Below, in pieces: positions 1,479 to 17,373 of a DNA stretch of 19,195 nucleotides. The notes under the pieces were generated by a model, which was not told the origin of the DNA, ran no database searches, and saw nothing but the letters and a program-made list of their open reading frames with translations. This DNA is from Trichoplax adhaerens (taxonomy: Eukaryota > Animalia > Placozoa). How positions within the stretch are numbered: position 1 is the first letter of the stretch; every line of letters begins with the position of its first letter. A program made the position numbers and the translations under genes. The stretch is taken from assembly GCF_000150275.1 (NCBI RefSeq), contig NW_002060946.1, forward strand, positions 7,441,991-7,461,185, given 5' to 3'.

Positions 1479-2437
1479 TCAAGATTTAAAATTGCAAATA
1501 CCATAAATTCGATAACATAGATTTCGTAATACCATTTTAATATTCTTGTCAAGAGAAAAGAACAAGGTCGGATTGACTAAGTAGGAGAAAAGATTAATAG
1601 TATATAATAGCGAATATCCTAATATTATACTTATATCATCTAAGAGATAAGAGTACCGATTTTGGCAAAATATTGCATAAAGTAAGGTTGCAATTACAAA
1701 GAGTAACGTTAATGACACTTGCATAATAGTTGCAATTATAAACCTTCGAAGTACACTCTTCGTACGGTTGGTTGAAGACTCATTATCATATCTGGCAGCA
1801 GTATTGTGGGATGTTTGATTGAATAAATAATGCCAATCCGCCTATAATTTCTTCTTATTATTAATACCGGAATCATACAGACGAGCAGCAAATATGCAAG
1901 AAGAGTAGATAGCGTTAAATATATAACCATATGGATAGCCAATATCACAAGTTTTCGCTTTTAAATCCTATGATCCAACTAGAAACGCAGGAAAGGCACA
2001 CACCATACTAATTAACCACGACAATATAATAATACTAGTGCAATGTTTAGATATTACCGAGTTTCGAAATGTTAATGGACTAGTAGCAAGTTTTAATCGA
2101 TAGATACTAATCGCTGTCAAACTTAAAATGGATGTATTATTTGAAATAGAAGGCATTTCTTGTTAAATTTTACATATGACATCACCTGTAGATTTTGATA
2201 TGACCTCACCTGATATTGTATTGGTAGTAAGGATAAATATCTAGATGGAAGAAATGACATCAGATATTGCGACATTAGTAATAAAATTATAAGACTGATC
2301 TTGTAGTTTTTTGGCTGATAACCGAAATACTACTAGAATACCGTTACTGAAAAATGTCAGCATGCAAAAAAAAGACACTATACAATCAAAATCAAGTTAC
2401 TTTGCTGATAAAGGAGCATTGCAGTATTATTAGACAT
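1479..2437 (-). pseudogene. Disrupted rhodopsin-class (class A) GPCR, a diverged paralog of the two intact GPCRs in this window
   Basis: Manual translation gives MSNNTAMLLYQQSNLILI / IVSFFCMLTFFSNGILVVFRLSAKKLQDQSYNFITNVAISDVISSI*IF...DVICKI*QEMPSISNNTSILSLTAISIYRLKL...SWLISMVCAFP...GS*DLKAKTCDIGYPYG... / MIPVLII..NY / ...LVNPTLFFSLDKNIK. This is colinear with KKLLDPTY, NVAASD, FCKV, ISLYRLK, KTC..GFPFG and NPILFLFFDKNIR of the intact paralogs. Lesions: a frameshift near 2381-2396, in-frame stops at 2241-2243, 2163-2165 and 1968-1970, and two compensating frameshifts near 1885 and 1835. Confidence 0.88.
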
Positions 2438-4259: not shown

Positions 4260-4974
4260 NNNNNNNNNNNNNNNNNNNNNNNNNNNNNNNNNNNNNNNNN
4301 NNNNNNNNNNNNNNNNNNNNNNNNNNNNNNNNNNNNNNNNNNNNNNNNNNNNNNNNNNNNNNNNNNNNNNNNNNNNNNNNNNNNNNNNNNNNNNNNNNNN
4401 NNNNNNNNNNNNNNNNNNNNNNNNNNNNNNNNNNNNNNNNNNNNNNNNNNNNNNNNNNNNNNNNNNNNNNNNNNNNNNNNNNNNNNNNNNNNNNNNNNNN
4501 NNNNNNNNNNNNNNNNNNNNNNNNNNNNNNNNNNNNNNNNNNNNNNNNNNNNNNNNNNNNNNNNNNNNNNNNNNNNNNNNNNNNNNNNNNNNNNNNNNNN
4601 NNNNNNNNNNNNNNNNNNNNNNNNNNNNNNNNNNNNNNNNNNNNNNNNNNNNNNNNNNNNNNNNNNNNNNNNNNNNNNNNNNNNNNNNNNNNNNNNNNNN
4701 NNNNNNNNNNNNNNNNNNNNNNNNNNNNNNNNNNNNNNNNNNNNNNNNNNNNNNNNNNNNNNNNNNNNNNNNNNNNNNNNNNNNNNNNNNNNNNNNNNNN
4801 NNNNNNNNNNNNNNNNNNNNNNNNNNNNNNNNNNNNNNNNNNNNNNNNNNNNNNNNNNNNNNNNNNNNNNNNNNNNNNNNNNNNNNNNNNNNNNNNNNNN
4901 NNNNNNNNNNNNNNNNNNNNNNNNNNNNNNNNNNNNNNNNNNNNNNNNNNNNNNNNNNNNNNNNNNNNNNNNNN
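4260..4974. other. Assembly gap (715 N)
   Basis: Run of N. The ORFs spanning it in the track are artefacts. Confidence 0.99.
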
Positions 4975-5836: not shown

Positions 5837-5886
5837 NNNNNNNNNNNNNNNNNNNNNNNNNNNNNNNNNNNNNNNNNNNNNNNNNN
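5837..5886. other. Assembly gap (50 N, probably a placeholder of unknown size)
   Basis: Run of exactly 50 N. Confidence 0.98.
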
Positions 5887-6714
5887 CCATCTGATAGGCG
5901 AAAGCGAAGTGAACAACGTGGAAATGCACGATCAGCAAAGCGGCGGGAGCTTGGACTAGTATACGTAATTTATATGTTTTGAATATCACTTGTTTACGGG
6001 AGAACCATGTTAAAGGTGTGTAAGAGCTTTATAATTATAATGATTAACTATCTAGAATGACGAGGTAAATGAAACTGTAGTGAAAGTGCTTTTTTTAATA
6101 AAGGCTTTTCACCTAGAGTGGTACTTTCTTAAATACTTAGCTGACTAATGTAGTACAACTTCTGTACTACAAGATAGTAAAAGCGCCTCATTTATATACT
6201 CTAACATTGGCATGAATCTGCATAACTTCTCTAACATTGCGATAACATTCTTGAGATATCATTTTTCAGTATAACACAATTGACTAATAAACATACTTGT
6301 ACCGTACAACATTAATTTATCATTTACCAGTACAGCAATACAAGATAACGGTAACAACTATGCATAGTTAAGGATATTAATCCTTAAGAACAATATTATC
6401 TAGCGTTGCTAGTCTAGCAGTCGCGACAAGAGAGTACTTTACCTACAGAAGCGTATTTATATTCTTTTCAGATTACAGAAATCCTTCTCAGGATACTTTA
6501 TTTTAAATAATGAAAAGATCTATCAATTTTATACCAGAGTGTAAAAGCTATCGCCTACGAGTACACATAATATTTCATATGTCTGTACTTAATATATAGT
6601 CTACTCTCGTTAATTTTTGAATAACAGGTCTATCAATAAATAAACAGGCTGTACAGTGCACACTGTAAAAACTCGGGAGTACTGTGTACAGTACAGTATG
6701 CCAACTATAAATTA

Positions 6715-7000
6715 CAGGAACGCCGGAAATCGAGAACAGTCCTAGAATCCTCGCGACGGCGAAAGGAGAAAGTTTGTGAGATTGCAAAGTATAGGTTGAC
6801 GACGANNNNNNNNNNNNNNNNNNNNNNNNNNNNNNNNNNNNNNNNNNNNNNNNNNATAGCGCATAGACTTCAGATACCTGAATTAGAGAGTAGCGTGCAA
6901 ATGTTTCTAAACTATCAGATAATTAGAGCGAGACGAACTTTCCTTCAATAAGAACGACGACTTTGCACGGTAGAAGAGAGACGCAGGAATGATGTCAAAA
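6715..7000 (+). promoter_or_regulatory. CpG/GC-enriched segment, candidate promoter or first non-coding exon of the integrase-derived gene
   Basis: Local CpG enrichment against the AT-rich background, an ETS-like GCCGGAAAT at 6722-6730 and TCGCGA at 6751-6756. It lies about 1 kb upstream of the ATG at 7892, and a splice acceptor (ttgttatatag, ending 7860) precedes the first coding exon. Confidence 0.35.
6806..6855. other. Assembly gap (50 N, probably a placeholder of unknown size)
   Basis: Run of exactly 50 N. Confidence 0.98.
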
Positions 7001-7891
7001 TTCAGCAATGTAGCGTCTTCTTGATAGTACTGTATCTTATTCTTTAGTATCGATCTGTTGGTGTTGGAAAATCGTTAATTTCACTAAATACGAAACTACT
7101 GAACAAACGCAAGCTAGATAGCTCGTACAGACCTATGATACGACAGTTTAGAACTTCAAAAGGATCTGTGGAATAGTATTAGTTTTGTAAGATACAGTAA
7201 CATATACGCGTATAATACATATTGGAGTAGACAGATAATGTTATACTGTTATTTTATCTACCGATATTTTACTATACTGACGCATGGTTTAATAAATATT
7301 CGTAGAGTAAAAGTCATTATGGCATGTAGTGTCTTAACATTCAAGTATGTGTGTCAGAATAAAGTGAAGACTTGAATTCTATTCGGAATTGATTCCAGCG
7401 TTGGCATGCTTTCTTTTGTTATGTACACTTGCCAAAACTAAACTATATTGTCGCTAAACAGTAAAGAATGATAATACAAACTTGTTACAACATGCCTAGA
7501 CACTCTACTATTGCCATTCGTCCATTACAACACAGTGGAGGCTGTGCTTTTAATTTTCTTAACTCAAAGATTAGAAATTAATTTAACTACGATGCTATGT
7601 TTTCTATTCGCTAAGGGTAGCGTCAAGCTTCCATACGAGCATACGTATAGCATAATTATAATTATCTATTCTAGTTTGGGTAATAACTTGTACTAATAAG
7701 GTAGCGAAGAATATTAGAAGTGCAAGTGTTAAAAGTAGAGTAATACGTTAATTAATTACGTTGAATAGCTCTTTCATAAATTTTGTTTCTCGTATGAATG
7801 TTATCAAGAAGGTATGTAGAATCATTTCTGATTATATTTTACATTTAATTTGTTATATAGGACGCAATCTGGAGGACATTCATAGTTTGCA

Positions 7892-9146
7892 ATGATGGAT
7901 GAAGAATTACGAATAGAATTTGACACAGAAGTTGCCAAATTTCGTGATTTAAAAACTAGCGCTTGGTCATTAACTAGAAATAAATACAACATGATTGCAA
8001 ATCGATTGCAACAACTGGTAGCGGATAAGTTACAGGCTAAGTCCTCCTACGATTATCACATCCTCAAGCGATATGAAGTCCGTTTGGTTTCGCATGATAG
8101 TCAGGATAATAGTTTAAAATTATTTATTAAGGGAACAAATAAACAATTTGTTGCAATTGAAGACATATTTGATATTATTCACTCTATACATATCCAAGCA
8201 AACCATGGCGGGCGCAATAAAATGAATGGGATATTGGCCAAGCAGTACGCTAACATAACGAGAAAACATTTACTTATTTACAAGCAGCTATGTCGTATTT
8301 GTACTGCGAAAGATCACAAAAACAAGCGTAAATCAGTAATCTCTGAACGTAAATCTTATAACGCTTTTTCAAGGTGCCAGGTAAGACAACAGGTATTAAA
8401 ATTTCCATTAAGTTACGGTAATTATCGGAATCATTATCCGCTAGATAGAGGTATTGGATATGGGTATTCTCCATCAAGATGACCTGCGATATATTCTAGT
8501 TTACCAAGACCAACTTACCAATTTTACGAAACTTAAGGCTTTAAAAACTAATACATCGTTAGAAGTTGCAGATCAGTTAGCGCAAATAATTTGTGACATT
8601 GGCGCTCCAGTAATTCTTCAAACTGTACATGGACCAAAATTTGCAAAAGAGGTCAAAAATTAAGATACTTATTAGTATTAGAGACGTATGTTCATAGTTA
8701 TTACTTCTAAAATGTTGTCTTTCATATCACATATATATTTTATCTTGATGTACGGTAATAAGCTTTTACTGTATATGTTACAGGTTCTAGACGAGTTAAG
8801 CCGCTTGTGGCCATATTGTAGATTAGTCTATAGTGACACAATGCATTCAAATCTCCAAAATTCCGTGGATACTACTATAAATATAGTCCAATCATTATTA
8901 ACGACTTCGCAATCAGATTTTGAAGCCAATATGAAATGGAGTATAAGATTATCATACATTCAGTGGCAAATAAATAACAGATTACATCCGATTATTGGTC
9001 GCACTCCATACGAAGCAATGTTCGGTTGTAAGCCAGCAGTTAGAATGATCCATGGTGCATTACCTGCTGAATTAATTGTTCGACCTAAGCAGGAACTTAA
9101 CTTGGTACAAAATGAAAATGAGATCGTATCGTCAAGGTATAATTAG
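7892..9146 (+). CDS. KRBA2/SCAND3-like (GINGER2/TDD-type) integrase-domain protein, catalytically degenerate; 3 coding exons 7892-8380, 8445-8651, 8784-9146; about 352 aa
   Basis: The spliced product has an HHCC zinc finger (H-x4-H-x28-C-x2-C: HIQANHGGR...CRIC) and rve-core motifs RCQIEVLDM, YILVYQDQLTNFTKLKALK, GAPVILQTVHGPKF, LSRLWP, W..RLSYIQWQINN and RTPYEAMFG. Two phase-0 GT-AG introns join the three ORF fragments without gaps relative to the family alignment as I recall it. The 3' end may splice further (donor at 9137). Confidence 0.88.
8381..8444 (+). other. Intron 1 of the integrase-like gene (64 nt, phase 0)
   Basis: CAG|GTAAGA donor and CTAG| acceptor. Removal restores RCQ-IEVLDM, matching the family motif RCQVDLIDM. 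Confidence 0.85.
8652..8783 (+). other. Intron 2 of the integrase-like gene (132 nt, phase 0)
   Basis: GAG|GTCAAA donor and TTACAG| acceptor. It contains an in-frame TAA (8661-8663). Removal restores FAKE-VLDEL..LWP and a 36-residue spacing between the second and third catalytic positions. Confidence 0.8.
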
Positions 9147-12124
9147 AATAAGATCACTGATTCCGTGATAGAATATAGCGGTACTGTTATTAAAAATTAA
9201 GAATGAAACTCTTTATCCGCCATCTGTGCAAAATGCTACTTCCTATAAAGACCTTCTAAGCTAACTCGACATGGTAGAGATAGTTTCTCAGAATTGTACG
9301 TGCAATCATACACAATATTAATGATATACCTTCAGACATTATGCATAAATACTGTAAAAGATTATTATAGAGTAGACCATATAACTTATTATTACTATAT
9401 TGAGTTACTCGTAATATTTGATTTGATTAAAGCTTTCCGAAGAAACCGGCAATCTTAACATTTGTTTAGCCAAAAGCTGTAATAAATGTTAAATGTACGA
9501 AGACTTCTTTACTAGTATTAATTCTTATGCAATATAATTATGGGTTATTTGGTAAACAATATGCTTAATTTATGAAATCATTTCTGTACTTGGTTCTAAC
9601 AACTATTTTTGCGAAGTTTAATGGCAACAATATTGTTAGAAAAATGCCCGATCATTGATGTTTTAAAAAACTGATCTATTCATTAGTGTAACATGCAATA
9701 TGAAAGGGATGCTTAATTTTGATACGTAATGGAATTACTTAAACTTTGAAATCTAAGTTCAAAAATTGAATCTGTTAGTGATTACTTATCTGCTGTTTCG
9801 ACTTACGACAGGAAAAGTAAAATATCTATTTAAAAATAATAAATATATAAGCAATACTGATGTTGCAGCGTTAGCCATATGCACTTAATTAAATAGCACC
9901 TGCATATTCATAAAGAAGTATTCTGGTAGTAATTTTCCATTATATCTATCTTTTGTATTTCATTACAAACAAAGTCAATTTAGGTAGAATTTATCTTGCG
10001 ACATTTGTGAAGTATACTTAATACTTGCAATCACGAATACAGGTATAGCATGTGAGCTTTCGCCATACGAACTTCTTTTCGAAAGTTGCTTCGATTGGTG
10101 TGTGATTTTGTTAATTTTATGCAAAAAGATATGGTTCTCTGAATTGTTCAAAAATTCTAATCATAAATAATTTGAAGTAAACAGGTTGTTACGGAATTCT
10201 CGTTAACAAAAATCTCTCCAACTACAGACTATAATTTCAAATACGAAGATAATTTCTATTGCATTGTATTAGAATGAAATTCTACAATTACTAGAATTTC
10301 CTGCAAGCCTGAAGCTTGTACATCCTTTGTACTAACACCATGACTGTACATTAAAATACAGCTGACTCAATATCATTAATTTCAGGCCTAAGTCTAACTC
10401 CATTGTATTTCGCATAAGAAAATTTAGTTTACGATACAAATCGAAATCAACGACAATATTACATAGAACCAAATCTAAGTAGAGGCTGTATGTGTATAGC
10501 AACGTTTTCATTTCAATGAATGTTCAAATCTATCAGATACAGAATTAATCGAATTTAGATTTAGCCTCACAAACATCATTTGCTGTGCTATCCAACGTTG
10601 AATGATTAGGTGATTTTATTTTGTTACTCAGATATAATTAATATCATTAGCAGGAAGTTAGCAGCAGCTAAAATTAATAAACACTGGTAAATTAGAGTCT
10701 AGTAATAAGTTAATAAATTGTAACATATGAAACTATACATTATTATCCTCTACTTACAATCAAATTTAATAAAGCTAGTTTCTATTATAGTAATTTTAAT
10801 ACGGGCATTTAACCAAAACTTTATGAGCTAATATTATATTTAACATTCTGGCAGTACGGTATTTTATTGTTGCAGAATCTTAGTGATGATCTTGATATAC
10901 GGCATGAATATAACCTTATTACGAGGAGTTACAGCACACCAACGTATGAAATGCGAAACAGGCTTATGTTAGAACGCTATGTACTATATGTACTAACAGG
11001 TAAAAGTTAAAGACAAATTGTATTTAATATTATGTAAGAAAAGGCTTTGTTACTCAAGTGTACAAGATTTCTATAGAGCTTGGTTGAAAAGTATCTGCTA
11101 TTTGCAAGACGTTATAATTTCATCGTCCTTGCATTAGTAAATTGCATAAGACTATAAAAACCTTCAAAATGAATATTTAATGATATATTTGTAGTATCTG
11201 AAAGTTTTAAATTAGCTAGTTTACCCATGAGTAAACATTTAAAAGGATTTCTGTAATACTATACAGTAATAAAAGGCACGTAAAGAATAGTTACGAAGGT
11301 ATCAAAATTTTAGTATTTCGTACCGTTGAATGACTGTTTTACCATAGGTGTATCAAATGAAAGTGACGACTTTTGGTGAAAGATGCTTATAAAGATGTTC
11401 TTAAAATAAGCAGTGTTCCATTTCGATTCAAGTGTTGTCTTAATTGTTCGTGAAAAGCTTTTTCGTTGATTCTTATCAAAGAATGACGGTTATGTATTAC
11501 ATCTATAACATGTAGCTGCCAGTAACAAAAGATTTCACGTATAGACAAGGAAAAATAATGTTGACTAAGAATGTTCTATTCTCATATCCATATAGATAAG
11601 AGAAAATGTATTATTCTTATGTTACCGTAATTACCACCTTGTATAGCTTTGTTACATCCCTTTCAGGTAGTAACGTCGTATAAATTAAATTAGCGTAGTG
11701 AATGCATCAGTAAATTATGGTAGAAATACTAGCTTTAAACTATTACATGATATTTTGCCGTTTCATATACATCAAATACCAGCGGCCATACTATTAGTTC
11801 ATTTTGGAGTAAATCTTTGACTACTGTGTGTTTCTGCTAGCTAGTAATATTCCACAAATTATTGAACGTAACGTTAGATGGTAGTCAGATAATGAACCAT
11901 AAATACTAACACACATTATCTTCTATTTATTTTGATTGATCTAAACGTTAATTGCAACTCTGACTGTGATGCACTGGTATTCCTCTCTGCCGCTAGAATA
12001 TCTTTGCAACTCGTAGGATAATCAAATATTCAATCAGTTTAATAGCTATTGGAAATTTATTCTACTAGTAAGACTCTAAACTTGCAGTAATTAGAAAAGA
12101 TAGCAAAGATCGCAGTAAAGCAGT

Positions 12125-13057
12125 CTAGCTGTAGTTTTTGATAGGCAGAATTCTAACGAGGTTTGATCTTATGTTTTTATCAAAAAACAAAAATAGAATT
12201 GGATTTATTAGACAGGTTGAGTAAGCAACTCCAAAAATAAATGCGAATGCTACTGATGACGGTGAATTTGTTCTTAATGAATCAAATTGGGTAGTATTGG
12301 CTAGTGCTATGCCTGTCATAAATATACTGAAAGGTAATATTAAAATCATGTAAACTGATGTTGTTATAACCATAAATTTTACTGCATTAAGAGATCGATT
12401 TACCTGACTTCTTCTATTTTTTTGCTCTGCCTGTTTTACTCGTGACAGTAGCTTGCGAAATATCTTAATATAGCAAAATAACATCACAATTGCGGGTATG
12501 ACGTATCCCACTATCATTACTGCTGTATAAAAAGTTTGATTAACTATTGGACCGAATGGAAATCCTGTCATACAAGTTTTGTAATCGCTGTTATAAGTTG
12601 TTAAAGAATAACCAGGAATAGAAATTGAGAAACTAACTGTCCATATCGCAATCATCCATTTTGAACGATGCTTGTATATGAATGAGGTTGAACGAAAATG
12701 AATGGGGTCTGAAACCATTTTGAGTCGATATAGGCTTATTAATGCCAAACTGAACGAAGATGTAAGTAATGAAGCATAAAAGATGAATGAAAGAACTTTA
12801 CAAAATATGGACCAGGCAAAATTACTTAACGGTATGTTAGTTAAACTGAAAAAGTTAATGACGAATACTTGTATCGATGTAGTCAGATCAGAGGCTGCTA
12901 CATTAATAATAAAGAGGTATGTCGGATCAAGCAATTTTTTTGAGCGAATAATTACCAAAAGCAGTAGGAAGTTACCAATTATCCCAAGAATTGAAACTGC
13001 GGTGATGCTAGCGGCCATAGATAGTAAAGCCGAACTGGAGGACGTGGAGTTATTCAT
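12125..13057 (-). CDS. Intronless rhodopsin-class (class A) G protein-coupled receptor, orphan, 310 aa
   Basis: Seven hydrophobic segments. TM1 GN, TM2 NVAASD, Cys at the top of TM3 (FCKV) with an ECL2 Cys (KTCM), DRY-position SLYRL, TM4 W, TM5 IP...CY, TM6 LPF, TM7 NPILF, and N-terminal N-glycosylation sequons (NNST). Confidence 0.95.
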   Translation of the reverse strand: MNNSTSSSSALLSMAASITAVSILGIIGNFLLLLVIIRSKKLLDPTYLFIINVAASDLTTSIQVFVINFFSLTNIPLSNFAWSIFCKVLSFIFYASLLTSSFSLALISLYRLKMVSDPIHFRSTSFIYKHRSKWMIAIWTVSFSISIPGYSLTTYNSDYKTCMTGFPFGPIVNQTFYTAVMIVGYVIPAIVMLFCYIKIFRKLLSRVKQAEQKNRRSQVNRSLNAVKFMVITTSVYMILILPFSIFMTGIALANTTQFDSLRTNSPSSVAFAFIFGVAYSTCLINPILFLFFDKNIRSNLVRILPIKNYS

Positions 13058-16093: not shown

Positions 16094-17020
16094 TTAGCTA
16101 TTAATAGAAAATATTCTGATCATGTTTGATTTTATATTTCTATCAAAACATAAAAATAAAATTGGATTTACTAGGCAAGTCAAGTAGCTACTGCCGTAAA
16201 TAAATGCGAATATCACAGAAGCTGGTGGATTTATTATTAGCAAATCAAACGGGGTTAAGTTTACTATCGCTAAAACCGCTAGAAATATGCTAAAAGGTAA
16301 TATTAAAATCATGTAAACTGATGTTGTAACAACCATAAATTTTACTGCATTAAGAGATCGATGTATTTGACTTCTACTAGTTTTTTGCTCGGCTTGTTGT
16401 ACTCGAGTTAGAAGCTTACGAAATATCCGAATATAGCAATAAAACATCACAATTACTGGTATGATGTATCCTATTATCAATACCGTTATGAAATAAATTT
16501 GATTTAATGTTTGACCGAATGGAGAATCTGTTACACAAATTTTGTATATACTACTATAAGCTGATAAAGGGAAACTAGGAATAGAAATCGAGAAACTAAC
16601 TATCCATATCGCGATCATCCATTTTGAACGATGCTTGTATATTAATGATGTTGTACGAAAATGTATGGGTTCTAATACCATTTTGAGTCGATATAAGCTT
16701 ATTAAAGCTAGACTGAACGAAGATGTAAGTAATGAAGTATAAAAGATAAATGAAAGAACTTTACAAAATATGGACCAACCAAAAGGACTTAGGTACAAGT
16801 CAATAGCGGTAAATAAATTGATGCAGAATACTTGGATAGATGTAGCTAGATCAGAGACTGCTACATTAGTGATAATGAGATATGTTGGATCCAGTAACTT
16901 CATAGAACGTATAATCACCAAGAGTAGCAGGGAGTTCCCTAATATCCCAAGTATAGCAATTGTAATGACACTGGCGGCCATAGGCAGCAAAGCTGAGCTA
17001 GAATTTGTGGAATTATTCAT
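16094..17020 (-). CDS. Intronless rhodopsin-class (class A) G protein-coupled receptor, orphan, 308 aa; close paralog of 12125-13057
   Basis: Same motif set (GN, NVAVSD, FCKV, SLYRL, W, IP..CY, LPF, NPILF). I placed the start at ATG 17020 (MNNST), matching the paralog; the track start at 17041 is a TTG. Confidence 0.95.
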   Translation of the reverse strand: MNNSTNSSSALLPMAASVITIAILGILGNSLLLLVIIRSMKLLDPTYLIITNVAVSDLATSIQVFCINLFTAIDLYLSPFGWSIFCKVLSFIFYTSLLTSSFSLALISLYRLKMVLEPIHFRTTSLIYKHRSKWMIAIWIVSFSISIPSFPLSAYSSIYKICVTDSPFGQTLNQIYFITVLIIGYIIPVIVMFYCYIRIFRKLLTRVQQAEQKTSRSQIHRSLNAVKFMVVTTSVYMILILPFSIFLAVLAIVNLTPFDLLIINPPASVIFAFIYGSSYLTCLVNPILFLCFDRNIKSNMIRIFSINS

Positions 17021-17373
17021 TCTATTAAAATGCTTTAGCAAGTTTTGCTGCTTTAACTCGAATATCTATAAAGTTAAAGATAAGGCAATTTCTGGATATA
17101 GATTATTTTTGATAAAATTTGAAACAGATTTAGAATTCGATATTCTGAAATGAAAAGATTTTGACAATTGCTGGAATGAGAAATTTAGATTAACTTTTAG
17201 ATTTTACGATAGAAACCTCAGTAGAAGGTTATTATAGTGCCACTGTATAGTTAGTCATAACCATTTAACTTTCAAAAGATAAGCGTTAAGGATATTTATG
17301 ACGAATATACATAATTTAAATATGATGACATACTATTTCAGTACGCTGGACGATAATTTTAACAATATATTGC

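What the first reader, a model, noticed from the sequence alone, without database searches (positions are those of the whole stretch)
7892..9146. Candidate domesticated GINGER2/KRBA2-like integrase gene with all three catalytic residues substituted
Seen: three ORF fragments splice through canonical phase-0 introns into an uninterrupted ~352-aa protein with an intact HHCC finger (codons at 8189, 8204, 8291, 8300) and an rve fold. The first catalytic Asp is Glu (RCQIEVLDM, 8448-8450), the second Asp is Val (LQTVHGPKF versus LQSDNGxEF, 8625-8627), and the Glu is Asp (LQNSVD versus SQGSVE, 8868-8870). Known: mammalian KRBA2 and SCAND3 are host genes derived from GINGER2-type integrase/transposases. 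Inference: an open frame and preserved structural residues, combined with a dead active site and no visible TIRs, point to an independent domestication as a non-catalytic DNA- or chromatin-binding protein. No KRAB or SCAN domain is evident in the model, and the host appears to be an early-branching animal.
Basis: partly seen in the sequence, partly recalled or inferred. Interest (0 to 1): 0.85.

Follow-up and report, generated by a model that had tools for sequence, protein, structure and literature searches.

The report
Domesticated dead integrase gene in Trichoplax
A single-copy, spliced and transcribed gene of the placozoan Trichoplax encodes a transposon-derived (Ginger2/KRBA2-like) integrase that keeps its zinc finger and fold but has lost all three catalytic residues, so it is a fairly ordinary but well-supported new case of a transposase turned into a host gene.

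Summary
The three exons 7892-8380, 8445-8651 and 8784-9146 give 352 codons. One RNA-seq contig joins them at exactly the predicted GT..AG introns. A further 5' UTR exon about 1 kb upstream falls partly in an assembly gap.

The same protein is public: RDD36129.1, "SCAN domain-containing protein 3", Trichoplax sp. H2, 351 aa, one residue different.

A family alignment, a profile match to prototype foamy virus (PFV) integrase (E 4.6e-17) and an AlphaFold model (pLDDT 85; top Foldseek hits are PFV integrase) place Glu, Val and Asp at the D, D, E columns. The HHCC zinc-finger residues are intact.

Evidence for domestication:
- The gene is unique in the 105.6-Mb genome apart from allelic contigs.
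- It lacks terminal inverted repeats (TIRs) and target site duplications (TSDs).
- It is syntenic in Trichoplax sp. H2.
- Other Ginger2-like copies in the genome carry stop codons.
- Its closest relative, from an unnamed organism in public reads, is a reciprocal best hit with the same exon structure and conserved upstream neighbours. That relative has an open frame with pN 0.375 against saturated pS 0.70, and a differently degenerate triad (N, D, N).

The binding function is inferred, not tested. This is a new member of a known kind (compare KRBA2, SCAND3, Imagin).

Full-length analyses used the public protein.

The parts
6749..6805 (+). Visible part of a non-coding 5' UTR exon. It runs about 21 nt further into the assembly gap 6806-6855 and ends at a GTAAGT donor seen on the allelic contig C1206.
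   Evidence: RNA contigs of X9 and X11 carry 31 and 78 extra letters before 7861. Those letters are found once in the genome, at C1206:8136-8165, followed by GTAAGT. C1206 aligns with window 5928-6805 and 6858-7737. The window reads ...TTGACGACGA and then N. The start of the exon is not mapped.
7861..8380 (+). Exon holding the 5' UTR (7861-7891) and coding exon 1 (7892-8380, 163 codons). It encodes an N-terminal helical/beta domain and the HHCC zinc-binding domain.
   Evidence: The acceptor AG is at 7859-7860, and RNA contigs start matching at 7861. The ATG is at 7892 with an in-frame TAG at 7883. Exon 1 alone finds 568 proteins at E<=0.001 and gives a weak zf-H2C2 hit.
8189..8302 (+). HHCC zinc-finger residues: His codons at 8189 and 8204, Cys codons at 8291 and 8300.
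   Evidence: These are invariant columns H99, H104, C133 and C136 in alignment A1. Integrase_H2C2 is found in 24 of 31 family members.
8381..8444 (+). Intron 1, 64 nt, GT..AG, phase 0.
   Evidence: Skipped in the X9 RNA contig. The relative L014 and the decayed paralog on C1092 have an intron at the same position.
8445..8651 (+). Coding exon 2 (69 codons): first half of the RNase H-fold core. Glu (8448-8450) replaces the first catalytic Asp and Val (8625-8627) replaces the second.
   Evidence: Family alignment. The family profile aligns these columns to D128 and D185 of PFV integrase.
8652..8783 (+). Intron 2, 132 nt, GT..AG, phase 0.
   Evidence: Skipped in the X9 RNA contig, and X11 shows a loose end that matches the end of exon 2. 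L014 and the decayed paralogs on C1414 and C150 have an intron at the same position.
8784..9146 (+). Coding exon 3 (120 codons plus TAG): second half of the core. Asp (8868-8870) replaces the catalytic Glu. There is no C-terminal domain and no Znf_SCAND3 finger.
   Evidence: Pfam finds nothing in the public full-length protein. Family members that are longer carry Znf_SCAND3.
9147..9714 (+). Probable 3' UTR.
   Evidence: A contig of run X10 spans 8907-9714. That run's RNA label is a guess, so the 3' end is not established.

Best explanation
This is a host gene of Trichoplax, made from the transposase of a Ginger2-type (KRBA2/SCAND3-like) cut-and-paste transposon.

The 352-aa protein keeps three of the ancestral modules: an N-terminal domain of about 85 residues, the HHCC zinc-binding domain and the RNase H-fold integrase core. 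It has lost the C-terminal part, including the SCAND3-type zinc finger, and all three metal-binding residues (D to E, D to V, E to D). It therefore cannot perform canonical two-metal DNA cleavage or strand transfer.

It is transcribed from a promoter about 1 kb upstream through a 5' UTR exon, and it is spliced at introns inherited from the transposon.

Shown here: the gene model, expression, the fold, the dead triad, single copy, synteny, and long-term maintenance of the frame.

Inferred: it works by binding rather than by catalysis. The most likely mode is binding DNA or chromatin through the N-terminal and HHCC domains and the core surface, possibly as a multimer. It would then act as a regulator or as a repressor of related transposon ends.
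For: Model and splicing:
- The exon model was read directly and an RNA contig confirms both splice junctions.
- An identical model is deposited for Trichoplax sp. H2.

Fold and residues:
- The family profile matches PFV integrase at E 4.6e-17 across the NTD and core.
- The AlphaFold model has pLDDT 85.4. The top Foldseek hits are PFV intasome integrase at E 5e-13, and core-only hits reach target TM about 0.75.
- The triad columns read E, V, D, while all 10 family-invariant residues are kept.

Not a mobile element:
- The only other copies at DNA level are allelic contigs, 98-99% identical.
- No TIRs or TSDs were found.
- Most other family loci in the genome carry stops.

Synteny:
- The H2 contig carries the same downstream GPCR gene.

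Deeply diverged relative (contigs L012-L014):
- Same three coding exons and canonical introns, with a 332-codon open frame.
- Sister to this gene in the tree, with SH-aLRT 97.
- Reciprocal best hit.
- Its upstream flank holds a 54-nt element. In this genome that element occurs only upstream of this gene's copies.
- Its upstream flank also holds a signal-peptide exon. Its best genome-wide matches lie on the same strand 24-49 kb upstream of the window and on the allelic contig C1206.
- pN is 0.375 against pS 0.704, which is saturated, giving omega of about 0.25.
- Its triad reads N, D, N, so the catalytic positions drift while the structural ones are held.

Polymorphism:
- Among runs and haplotypes there are 4 synonymous and 4 non-synonymous coding variants, giving pN/pS of about 0.26 by my count.
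Against: - The organism behind L012-L014 is unknown, so orthology rests on microsynteny, tree position and reciprocal best hit. It cannot be checked against a species tree.
- dS is saturated, so omega is only an upper-bound style estimate.
- H1/H2 and haplotype differences are too few to measure selection. Each comparison has one coding difference, and both differences are non-synonymous.
- Some RNA-labelled contigs also contain the introns, which means intron retention or DNA carry-over.
- Many database relatives also have degenerate triads, so a dead triad alone is common in this family.
- No binding, localisation or phenotype data exist. The dimer prediction gave no verdict.
- The gene is not in the T. 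adhaerens protein set seen by the searches.
Confidence: 0.72

Rival explanations
1. It is an inert relic of a Ginger2 transposon that is transcribed and spliced by accident, with no function for the host.
For: The genome holds many decayed family copies. Degenerate triads are frequent among database relatives. The two differences from the H2 copy and from the other haplotype are both non-synonymous. The T. adhaerens protein set seen here has no model for it.
Against: A 352-codon frame has a chance of about 2e-13 of staying open at this composition. The closest relative also keeps its frame open, and both introns, at saturated synonymous divergence, with pN about half of pS. All 10 family-invariant structural residues are kept. 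The other copies in the same genome did acquire stops.
Confidence: 0.08
2. It is still an enzyme: a nuclease or transferase that uses a non-canonical acidic site, for example Glu at the first position, the conserved Asp four residues later (..IEVLDM..) and Asp at the third position.
For: Two of the three substituted positions are still acidic (E and D), and the family-conserved second Asp of the DxxD motif is present.
Against: Val at the second position cannot bind metal. The closest relative has N, D, N at the three positions, so no acidic constellation is conserved between the two. The C-terminal domain present in longer family members is absent.
Confidence: 0.06
3. It is a host gene, but it acts through protein-protein or RNA binding (scaffold, decoy or cytosolic role, as reported for Imagin) rather than on DNA or chromatin.
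For: Imagin, a Ginger1-derived gene with a lost DDE triad, is reported to accumulate in oocyte cytosol (PMC12863088). Nothing here shows nuclear localisation or DNA binding.
Against: The HHCC domain and the N-terminal domain are the best conserved parts between the two relatives (alignments). By established knowledge, these domains contact DNA in solved intasomes of retroviral integrases. The linker between the NTD and the core is basic (..KNKRK..).
Confidence: 0.1
4. It is part of a still mobile, possibly non-autonomous, Ginger2 element whose ends lie outside the region inspected.
For: Ginger2 elements reach 6-7 kb (PMC2836005). The upstream sequence differs between haplotype assemblies.
Against: No second copy exists anywhere in 105.6 Mb apart from allelic contigs. 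The flanks are shared with H2, including the GPCR gene. The upstream neighbours are conserved in the diverged relative. The only 15-nt inverted repeats lack TSDs, and their left arms are missing in H2.
Confidence: 0.02

Closest known systems
Ginger2/Tdd DNA transposon transposases (Bao, Kapitonov and Jurka 2010, PMC2836005). These proteins are auto-annotated as 'KRAB-A domain-containing protein 2-like' or 'SCAN domain-containing protein 3-like' in invertebrates.
   Same: [quoted passage not shown] Sequence similarity to P0151 is E 1e-48 at 34% identity. The introns are at positions shared with decayed copies in the same genome.
   Different: The D, D, E triad is replaced by E, V, D. There are no TIRs, no TSD and only a single copy. 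The C-terminal region with the SCAND3-type zinc finger is missing. The gene is fixed at a syntenic locus.
Mammalian KRBA2 and SCAND3 (ZBED9), host genes with a Ginger2-derived integrase domain (Llorens et al. 2012, PMC3575427).
   Same: Same source superfamily and the same kind of event, an integrase domain kept in a host gene. NCBI names the H2 protein after SCAND3.
   Different: There is no KRAB, SCAN or hAT-derived part. The protein is much shorter. It occurs in a placozoan, so it is presumably an independent event, though that was not tested by a tree here.
Imagin, a Ginger1-derived integrase-like gene of malacostracan crustaceans (PMC12863088).
   Same: A single-copy multi-exon gene with transposon-borne introns. 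H2C2 and the core are kept, the DDE triad and the inverted repeats are lost, and it is under purifying selection.
   Different: Imagin derives from Ginger1 (with the YPYY motif), not Ginger2. It is in a different phylum. Its reported dN/dS is 0.05-0.13, against an estimate of about 0.25 with saturated dS here.
GIN1 / Gin-2, vertebrate genes derived from Ginger1 (PMC2836005).
   Same: Domesticated integrase genes that kept the transposon's intron positions and lack flanking TIRs.
   Different: They originate from Ginger1 and are restricted to vertebrates.
Prototype foamy virus integrase (for example PDB 3l2q, 4e7k).
   Same: Best structural and profile match across the N-terminal region, the HHCC domain and the catalytic core.
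   Different: The match is at fold level only (17-22% identity). PFV integrase has D128, D185 and E221 and a C-terminal domain. This protein has neither.

Membership tests
Ginger2/Tdd transposase family | H2C2 (HHCC) zinc-binding domain N-terminal to the core | tested here: met
   H99, H104, C133 and C136 are invariant in A1. Exon 1 gives a weak zf-H2C2 hit (E 0.045). Integrase_H2C2 is found in 24 of 31 relatives.
Ginger2/Tdd transposase family | Integrase-type RNase H-fold core | tested here: met
   The family profile matches PFV integrase at E 4.6e-17. The model has pLDDT 85.4 and Foldseek E is 5e-13. Pfam rve itself is not detected in this protein alone.
Ginger2/Tdd transposase family | Catalytic D, D, E triad | tested here: not met
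   The three columns read E, V, D.
Ginger2/Tdd transposase family | Element ends: 50-180 bp TIRs with TGTNR termini and 4-bp TSDs; multiple copies | tested here: not met
   Only two chance 15-nt inverted repeats were found, without TSDs. There is no other copy in the genome apart from allelic contigs.
Ginger2/Tdd transposase family | Sequence kinship with recognised Ginger2-type (KRBA2-like/SCAND3-like) proteins; no YPYY or GPY/F motifs | tested here: met
   P0151 matches at E 1e-48, and its relatives bear those names, including in species where Ginger2 was described (aphids, Littorina). There is no YPYY string in the protein. No tree with Repbase Ginger2 sequences could be made.
KRBA2 / SCAND3 (ZBED9) host genes | KRAB or SCAN domain (and hAT part in SCAND3) fused to the integrase domain | tested here: not met
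   Pfam finds no domain at E<=0.01 in the full-length public protein.
KRBA2 / SCAND3 (ZBED9) host genes | Orthology with the mammalian genes | not tested
   No mammalian KRBA2 or SCAND3 sequences were at hand. The literature dates those genes within tetrapods and mammals (PMC3575427).
Domesticated (exapted) transposase genes in general | Single copy, immobile, syntenic across lineages, expressed, frame kept under purifying selection | tested here: met
   Caveats: the organism of the diverged relative is unknown and dS is saturated.

The most novel reading that the evidence does not exclude
The gene is an ancient placozoan host factor. It would have been fixed before the split of deeply diverged placozoan lineages, and it arose independently of vertebrate KRBA2 and SCAND3. 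It would use a catalytically dead Ginger2 integrase (N-terminal domain, HHCC domain and core) as a sequence- or structure-specific DNA-binding module, for example to regulate genes or to silence Ginger2 ends. That would make it an integrase domestication in one of the earliest-branching animal phyla.
Probability: 0.35. Interest if true: 0.6.

Novelty: new member of a known kind. Interest (0 to 1): 0.45.

Why it matters
Domesticated integrases and transposases are well documented in vertebrates, and recently in crustaceans (Imagin). The paper searches here found no description of a Ginger2-derived host gene in Placozoa.

This case is small at 352 aa and has a clean structure. It is already supported by transcripts and by a deeply diverged relative in which the catalytic positions drift while the structural residues hold. 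That makes it a convenient model for asking what a catalytically dead integrase fold is kept for.

It also corrects the automatic name 'SCAN domain-containing protein 3', because the protein has no SCAN domain. And it adds a gene that the T. adhaerens protein set seen here lacks.

Tried and rejected
- Pfam, exon by exon, gave only a sub-threshold zf-H2C2 hit. Pfam on the public full-length protein gave nothing. The rve claim therefore had to be carried by the family profile and the structure model.
- The search for homologous proteins with exon 1 found nothing. This is a word-index and length limit, not evidence of absence.
- The TIR search found two perfect 15-nt inverted repeats (5000/9722 and 6472/11243). 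I rejected both: they have no TSDs, no extension of complementarity, and their left arms are absent from the H2 contig.
- I asked whether the conserved 54-nt upstream element is a tRNA. ARAGORN found none.
- Shared intron positions cannot serve as evidence of orthology, because decayed paralogs share them.
- H1/H2 and haplotype comparison for dN/dS has too few differences.
- The homodimer prediction of the core (residues 156-351, two copies) gave no verdict: score 0.57, with one control at 0.58. It is not evidence either way.
- Paper searches for Trichoplax plus Ginger2, for Trichoplax plus the SCAND3 name, and for the SRA run prefix of the relative's contigs gave nothing useful.

Full report
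**Source.** The window is G000:C1411:7441991-7461185 of a 105.6-Mb, 1414-contig genome. A paralog on contig C1355 (37,731 bp) encodes the deposited protein TRIADDRAFT_62470 of Trichoplax adhaerens. The gene studied here is 99% identical to a Trichoplax sp. H2 contig.

**Observation.**
- The three exons, their phase-0 GT..AG introns and the 352-codon frame are as described. An in-frame TAG at 7883 closes the frame upstream of the ATG.
- The exon 1 search returned a public 351-aa protein, P0001 (NCBI RDD36129.1, 'SCAN domain-containing protein 3 [Trichoplax sp. H2]'). All full-length analyses used that database protein.

**Transcription and splicing.**
- In the RNA-seq run X9, one 831-nt contig joins 8378|8443 and 8649|8782 (GT..AG, cut +2). 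These are exactly the predicted introns 8381-8444 and 8652-8783.
- X11 shows the exon 2 to exon 3 junction as a loose end.
- X10 and X11 also hold intron-containing pieces, from intron retention or DNA.
- Contigs of X9 and X11 both stop matching at 7861, just after an AG, and continue with letters that occur only once in the genome. That place is on the allelic contig C1206, directly before a GTAAGT donor.
- In the window this 5' UTR exon starts by about 6749 and runs into the N gap at 6806-6855. The gene thus has at least four exons and a promoter about 1.1 kb upstream of the ATG.

**Fold and residues.**
- Pfam alone fails on this protein.
- Among 31 aligned relatives, 24 carry Integrase_H2C2, 16 carry rve and 3 carry Znf_SCAND3.
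- The profile of that alignment matches PFV integrase at E 4.6e-17 from the HHCC domain through the core. The family's D, D, E columns fall on D128, D185 and E221.
- An AlphaFold2 model of P0001 has mean pLDDT 85.4. Its best Foldseek hits are PFV intasome integrases at E about 5e-13. Core-only chains reach target-normalised TM about 0.75 and rmsd 3.2-3.7 Å.
- In the alignment the protein has Glu, Val and Asp where intact members have ..QVDLIDM....LQSDNGREF.. and ..SQGSVERAN...
- The four HHCC residues and six further family-invariant residues are retained.
- The protein ends soon after the core. It lacks the C-terminal region and the SCAND3-type finger that longer relatives have.

**Family.** The best full-length relative, P0151 (34% identity, E 1e-48, intact triad), belongs to a large set of animal proteins auto-named 'KRAB-A domain-containing protein 2-like' or 'SCAN domain-containing protein 3-like'. 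The set includes aphids and Littorina, where Ginger2 elements were first described. The Ginger2/KRBA2-like assignment is supported.

**Transposon or gene?**
- At DNA level the 3.8-kb unit occurs only here and on the contigs C1185 (99%) and C1206 (98%). These are alternative haplotype assemblies.
- At protein level the genome has roughly 15-20 other family loci. They are closer to the canonical transposase (up to 62% identity), but most of them are interrupted by stops.
- No TIRs or TSDs flank the gene.
- The H2 contig is collinear through the downstream intronless GPCR gene.

**The closest relative.**
- P0003 lies on three contigs from runs SRR30664515-17, organism not given.
- Its locus has the same three coding exons, canonical introns at the same two positions, and an open 332-codon frame.
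- It is sister to the Trichoplax gene (SH-aLRT 97) among 136 sequences. It is also its reciprocal best hit in the genome.
- Its 4.4-kb upstream flank shares two things with the Trichoplax locus:
  - The first is a 54-nt element found in this genome in only two places. One is 2.9 kb upstream of the C1185 copy (likewise in H2). The other is a 92%-identical duplicate further upstream on C1411.
  - The second is a signal-peptide plus acidic exon. Its best genome-wide matches all lie on the same strand 24-49 kb upstream of the window and on C1206.
- I take this as microsynteny, and so as orthology with a diverged placozoan.

**Selection.**
- Over 332 aligned codons the amino-acid identity is 41%. 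pS is 0.704 (saturated) and pN is 0.375, giving omega of about 0.25 by Nei-Gojobori summed per exon.
- At the local composition a stop is expected every 13 codons or so. Open frames in both lineages therefore imply selection on the protein.
- The relative's triad reads N, D, N against E, V, D here. The catalytic positions are free to vary, while the zinc ligands and the structural core are held.
- Variants among runs and haplotypes split 4 synonymous to 4 non-synonymous. That gives pN/pS of about 0.26, which is only marginally significant.
- H1/H2 and haplotype differences are too few to use.

**Mechanism.**
- Shown: an expressed, spliced, single-copy, syntenic, selectively maintained integrase-fold protein without a metal-binding triad.
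- Inferred: it acts by binding. The most conserved parts are the HHCC domain and the blocks around ..YxLVYQD.., ..ELSRLWP.. and ..TPYxAxFG...
- A basic, disordered linker (..KNKRK..) separates the zinc domain from the core.
- By analogy with solved intasomes, the N-terminal and HHCC domains would contact DNA.
- The dimer prediction gave no verdict.

**Comparison and novelty.**
- This is the same kind of event as KRBA2 and SCAND3 (Ginger2-derived, mammals; PMC3575427). It also resembles GIN1 and Gin-2 (Ginger1-derived; PMC2836005).
- The closest parallel is Imagin. Imagin is Ginger1-derived, keeps transposon introns and H2C2, and has lost its DDE triad and inverted repeats (PMC12863088).
- I found no paper that describes it in Placozoa. 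The H2 protein carries only an automatic and misleading name.
- It is therefore a new member of a known kind, of moderate interest.

Noticed in passing
window 12125-13057 (-) and 16094-17041 (-); fragments at 1479-1948 (-): Two intronless rhodopsin-type GPCR genes of 310 and 315 aa lie in tandem at about 78% nucleotide identity (7tm_1 on the H2 ortholog). On the H2 and C1185 arrangement a further copy lies upstream of the integrase-derived gene.
   Followed up: partly
window about 10129-10344: A dispersed repeat of about 200 bp has at least 10 copies elsewhere in the genome at 72-78% identity. One run lacks 18 nt inside it, at 10227.
   Followed up: no
window 4260-4974, 5837-5886 and 6806-6855 (N gaps); contigs C1185 and C1206: Small contigs are alternative haplotype assemblies of this locus. 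C1185 and H2 share an upstream arrangement (GPCR copy plus 2.4 kb) that the window lacks. C1206 matches the window's arrangement and fills the gap that hides the end of the 5' UTR exon.
   Followed up: partly
L011 (H2) 1428-1478; C1185:5629-5679; C1411:7411221-7411271; L012 1165-1755 (three copies): A conserved 54-nt element opens a short ORF (MMASPST.. / MVASPSP..). It lies 2.7-2.9 kb upstream of the gene in H2, in C1185 and in the diverged relative. Its nature is unknown and it is not a tRNA.
   Followed up: partly
G000:C1411:7400896-7418255 (+), C1206:1854-2012; L012:267-473: A tandem family of exons encodes a signal peptide plus an acidic stretch upstream of the gene.
   Followed up: partly
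protein P0017 (398 aa, origin unknown): The same N-terminal plus HHCC module is fused to a BTB/POZ domain and C2H2-like fingers instead of an integrase core. This may be another domestication of the module.
   Followed up: no
G000:C1355:35263-37116 (-) and G000:C1411:7676966-7677343 (+): Two paralogs. One is TRIADDRAFT_62470, which has an N-terminal module plus Znf_SCAND3 and a model that spans an assembly gap. The other is an open N-terminal fragment 227 kb downstream on the same scaffold. Their status as gene or relic is unknown.
   Followed up: no
proteins P0002, P0004, P0007 (1162-1848 aa, origin unknown): These long predicted proteins hold three or four stretches that match the exon 1 module. 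They could be tandem copies or concatenated gene models.
   Followed up: no
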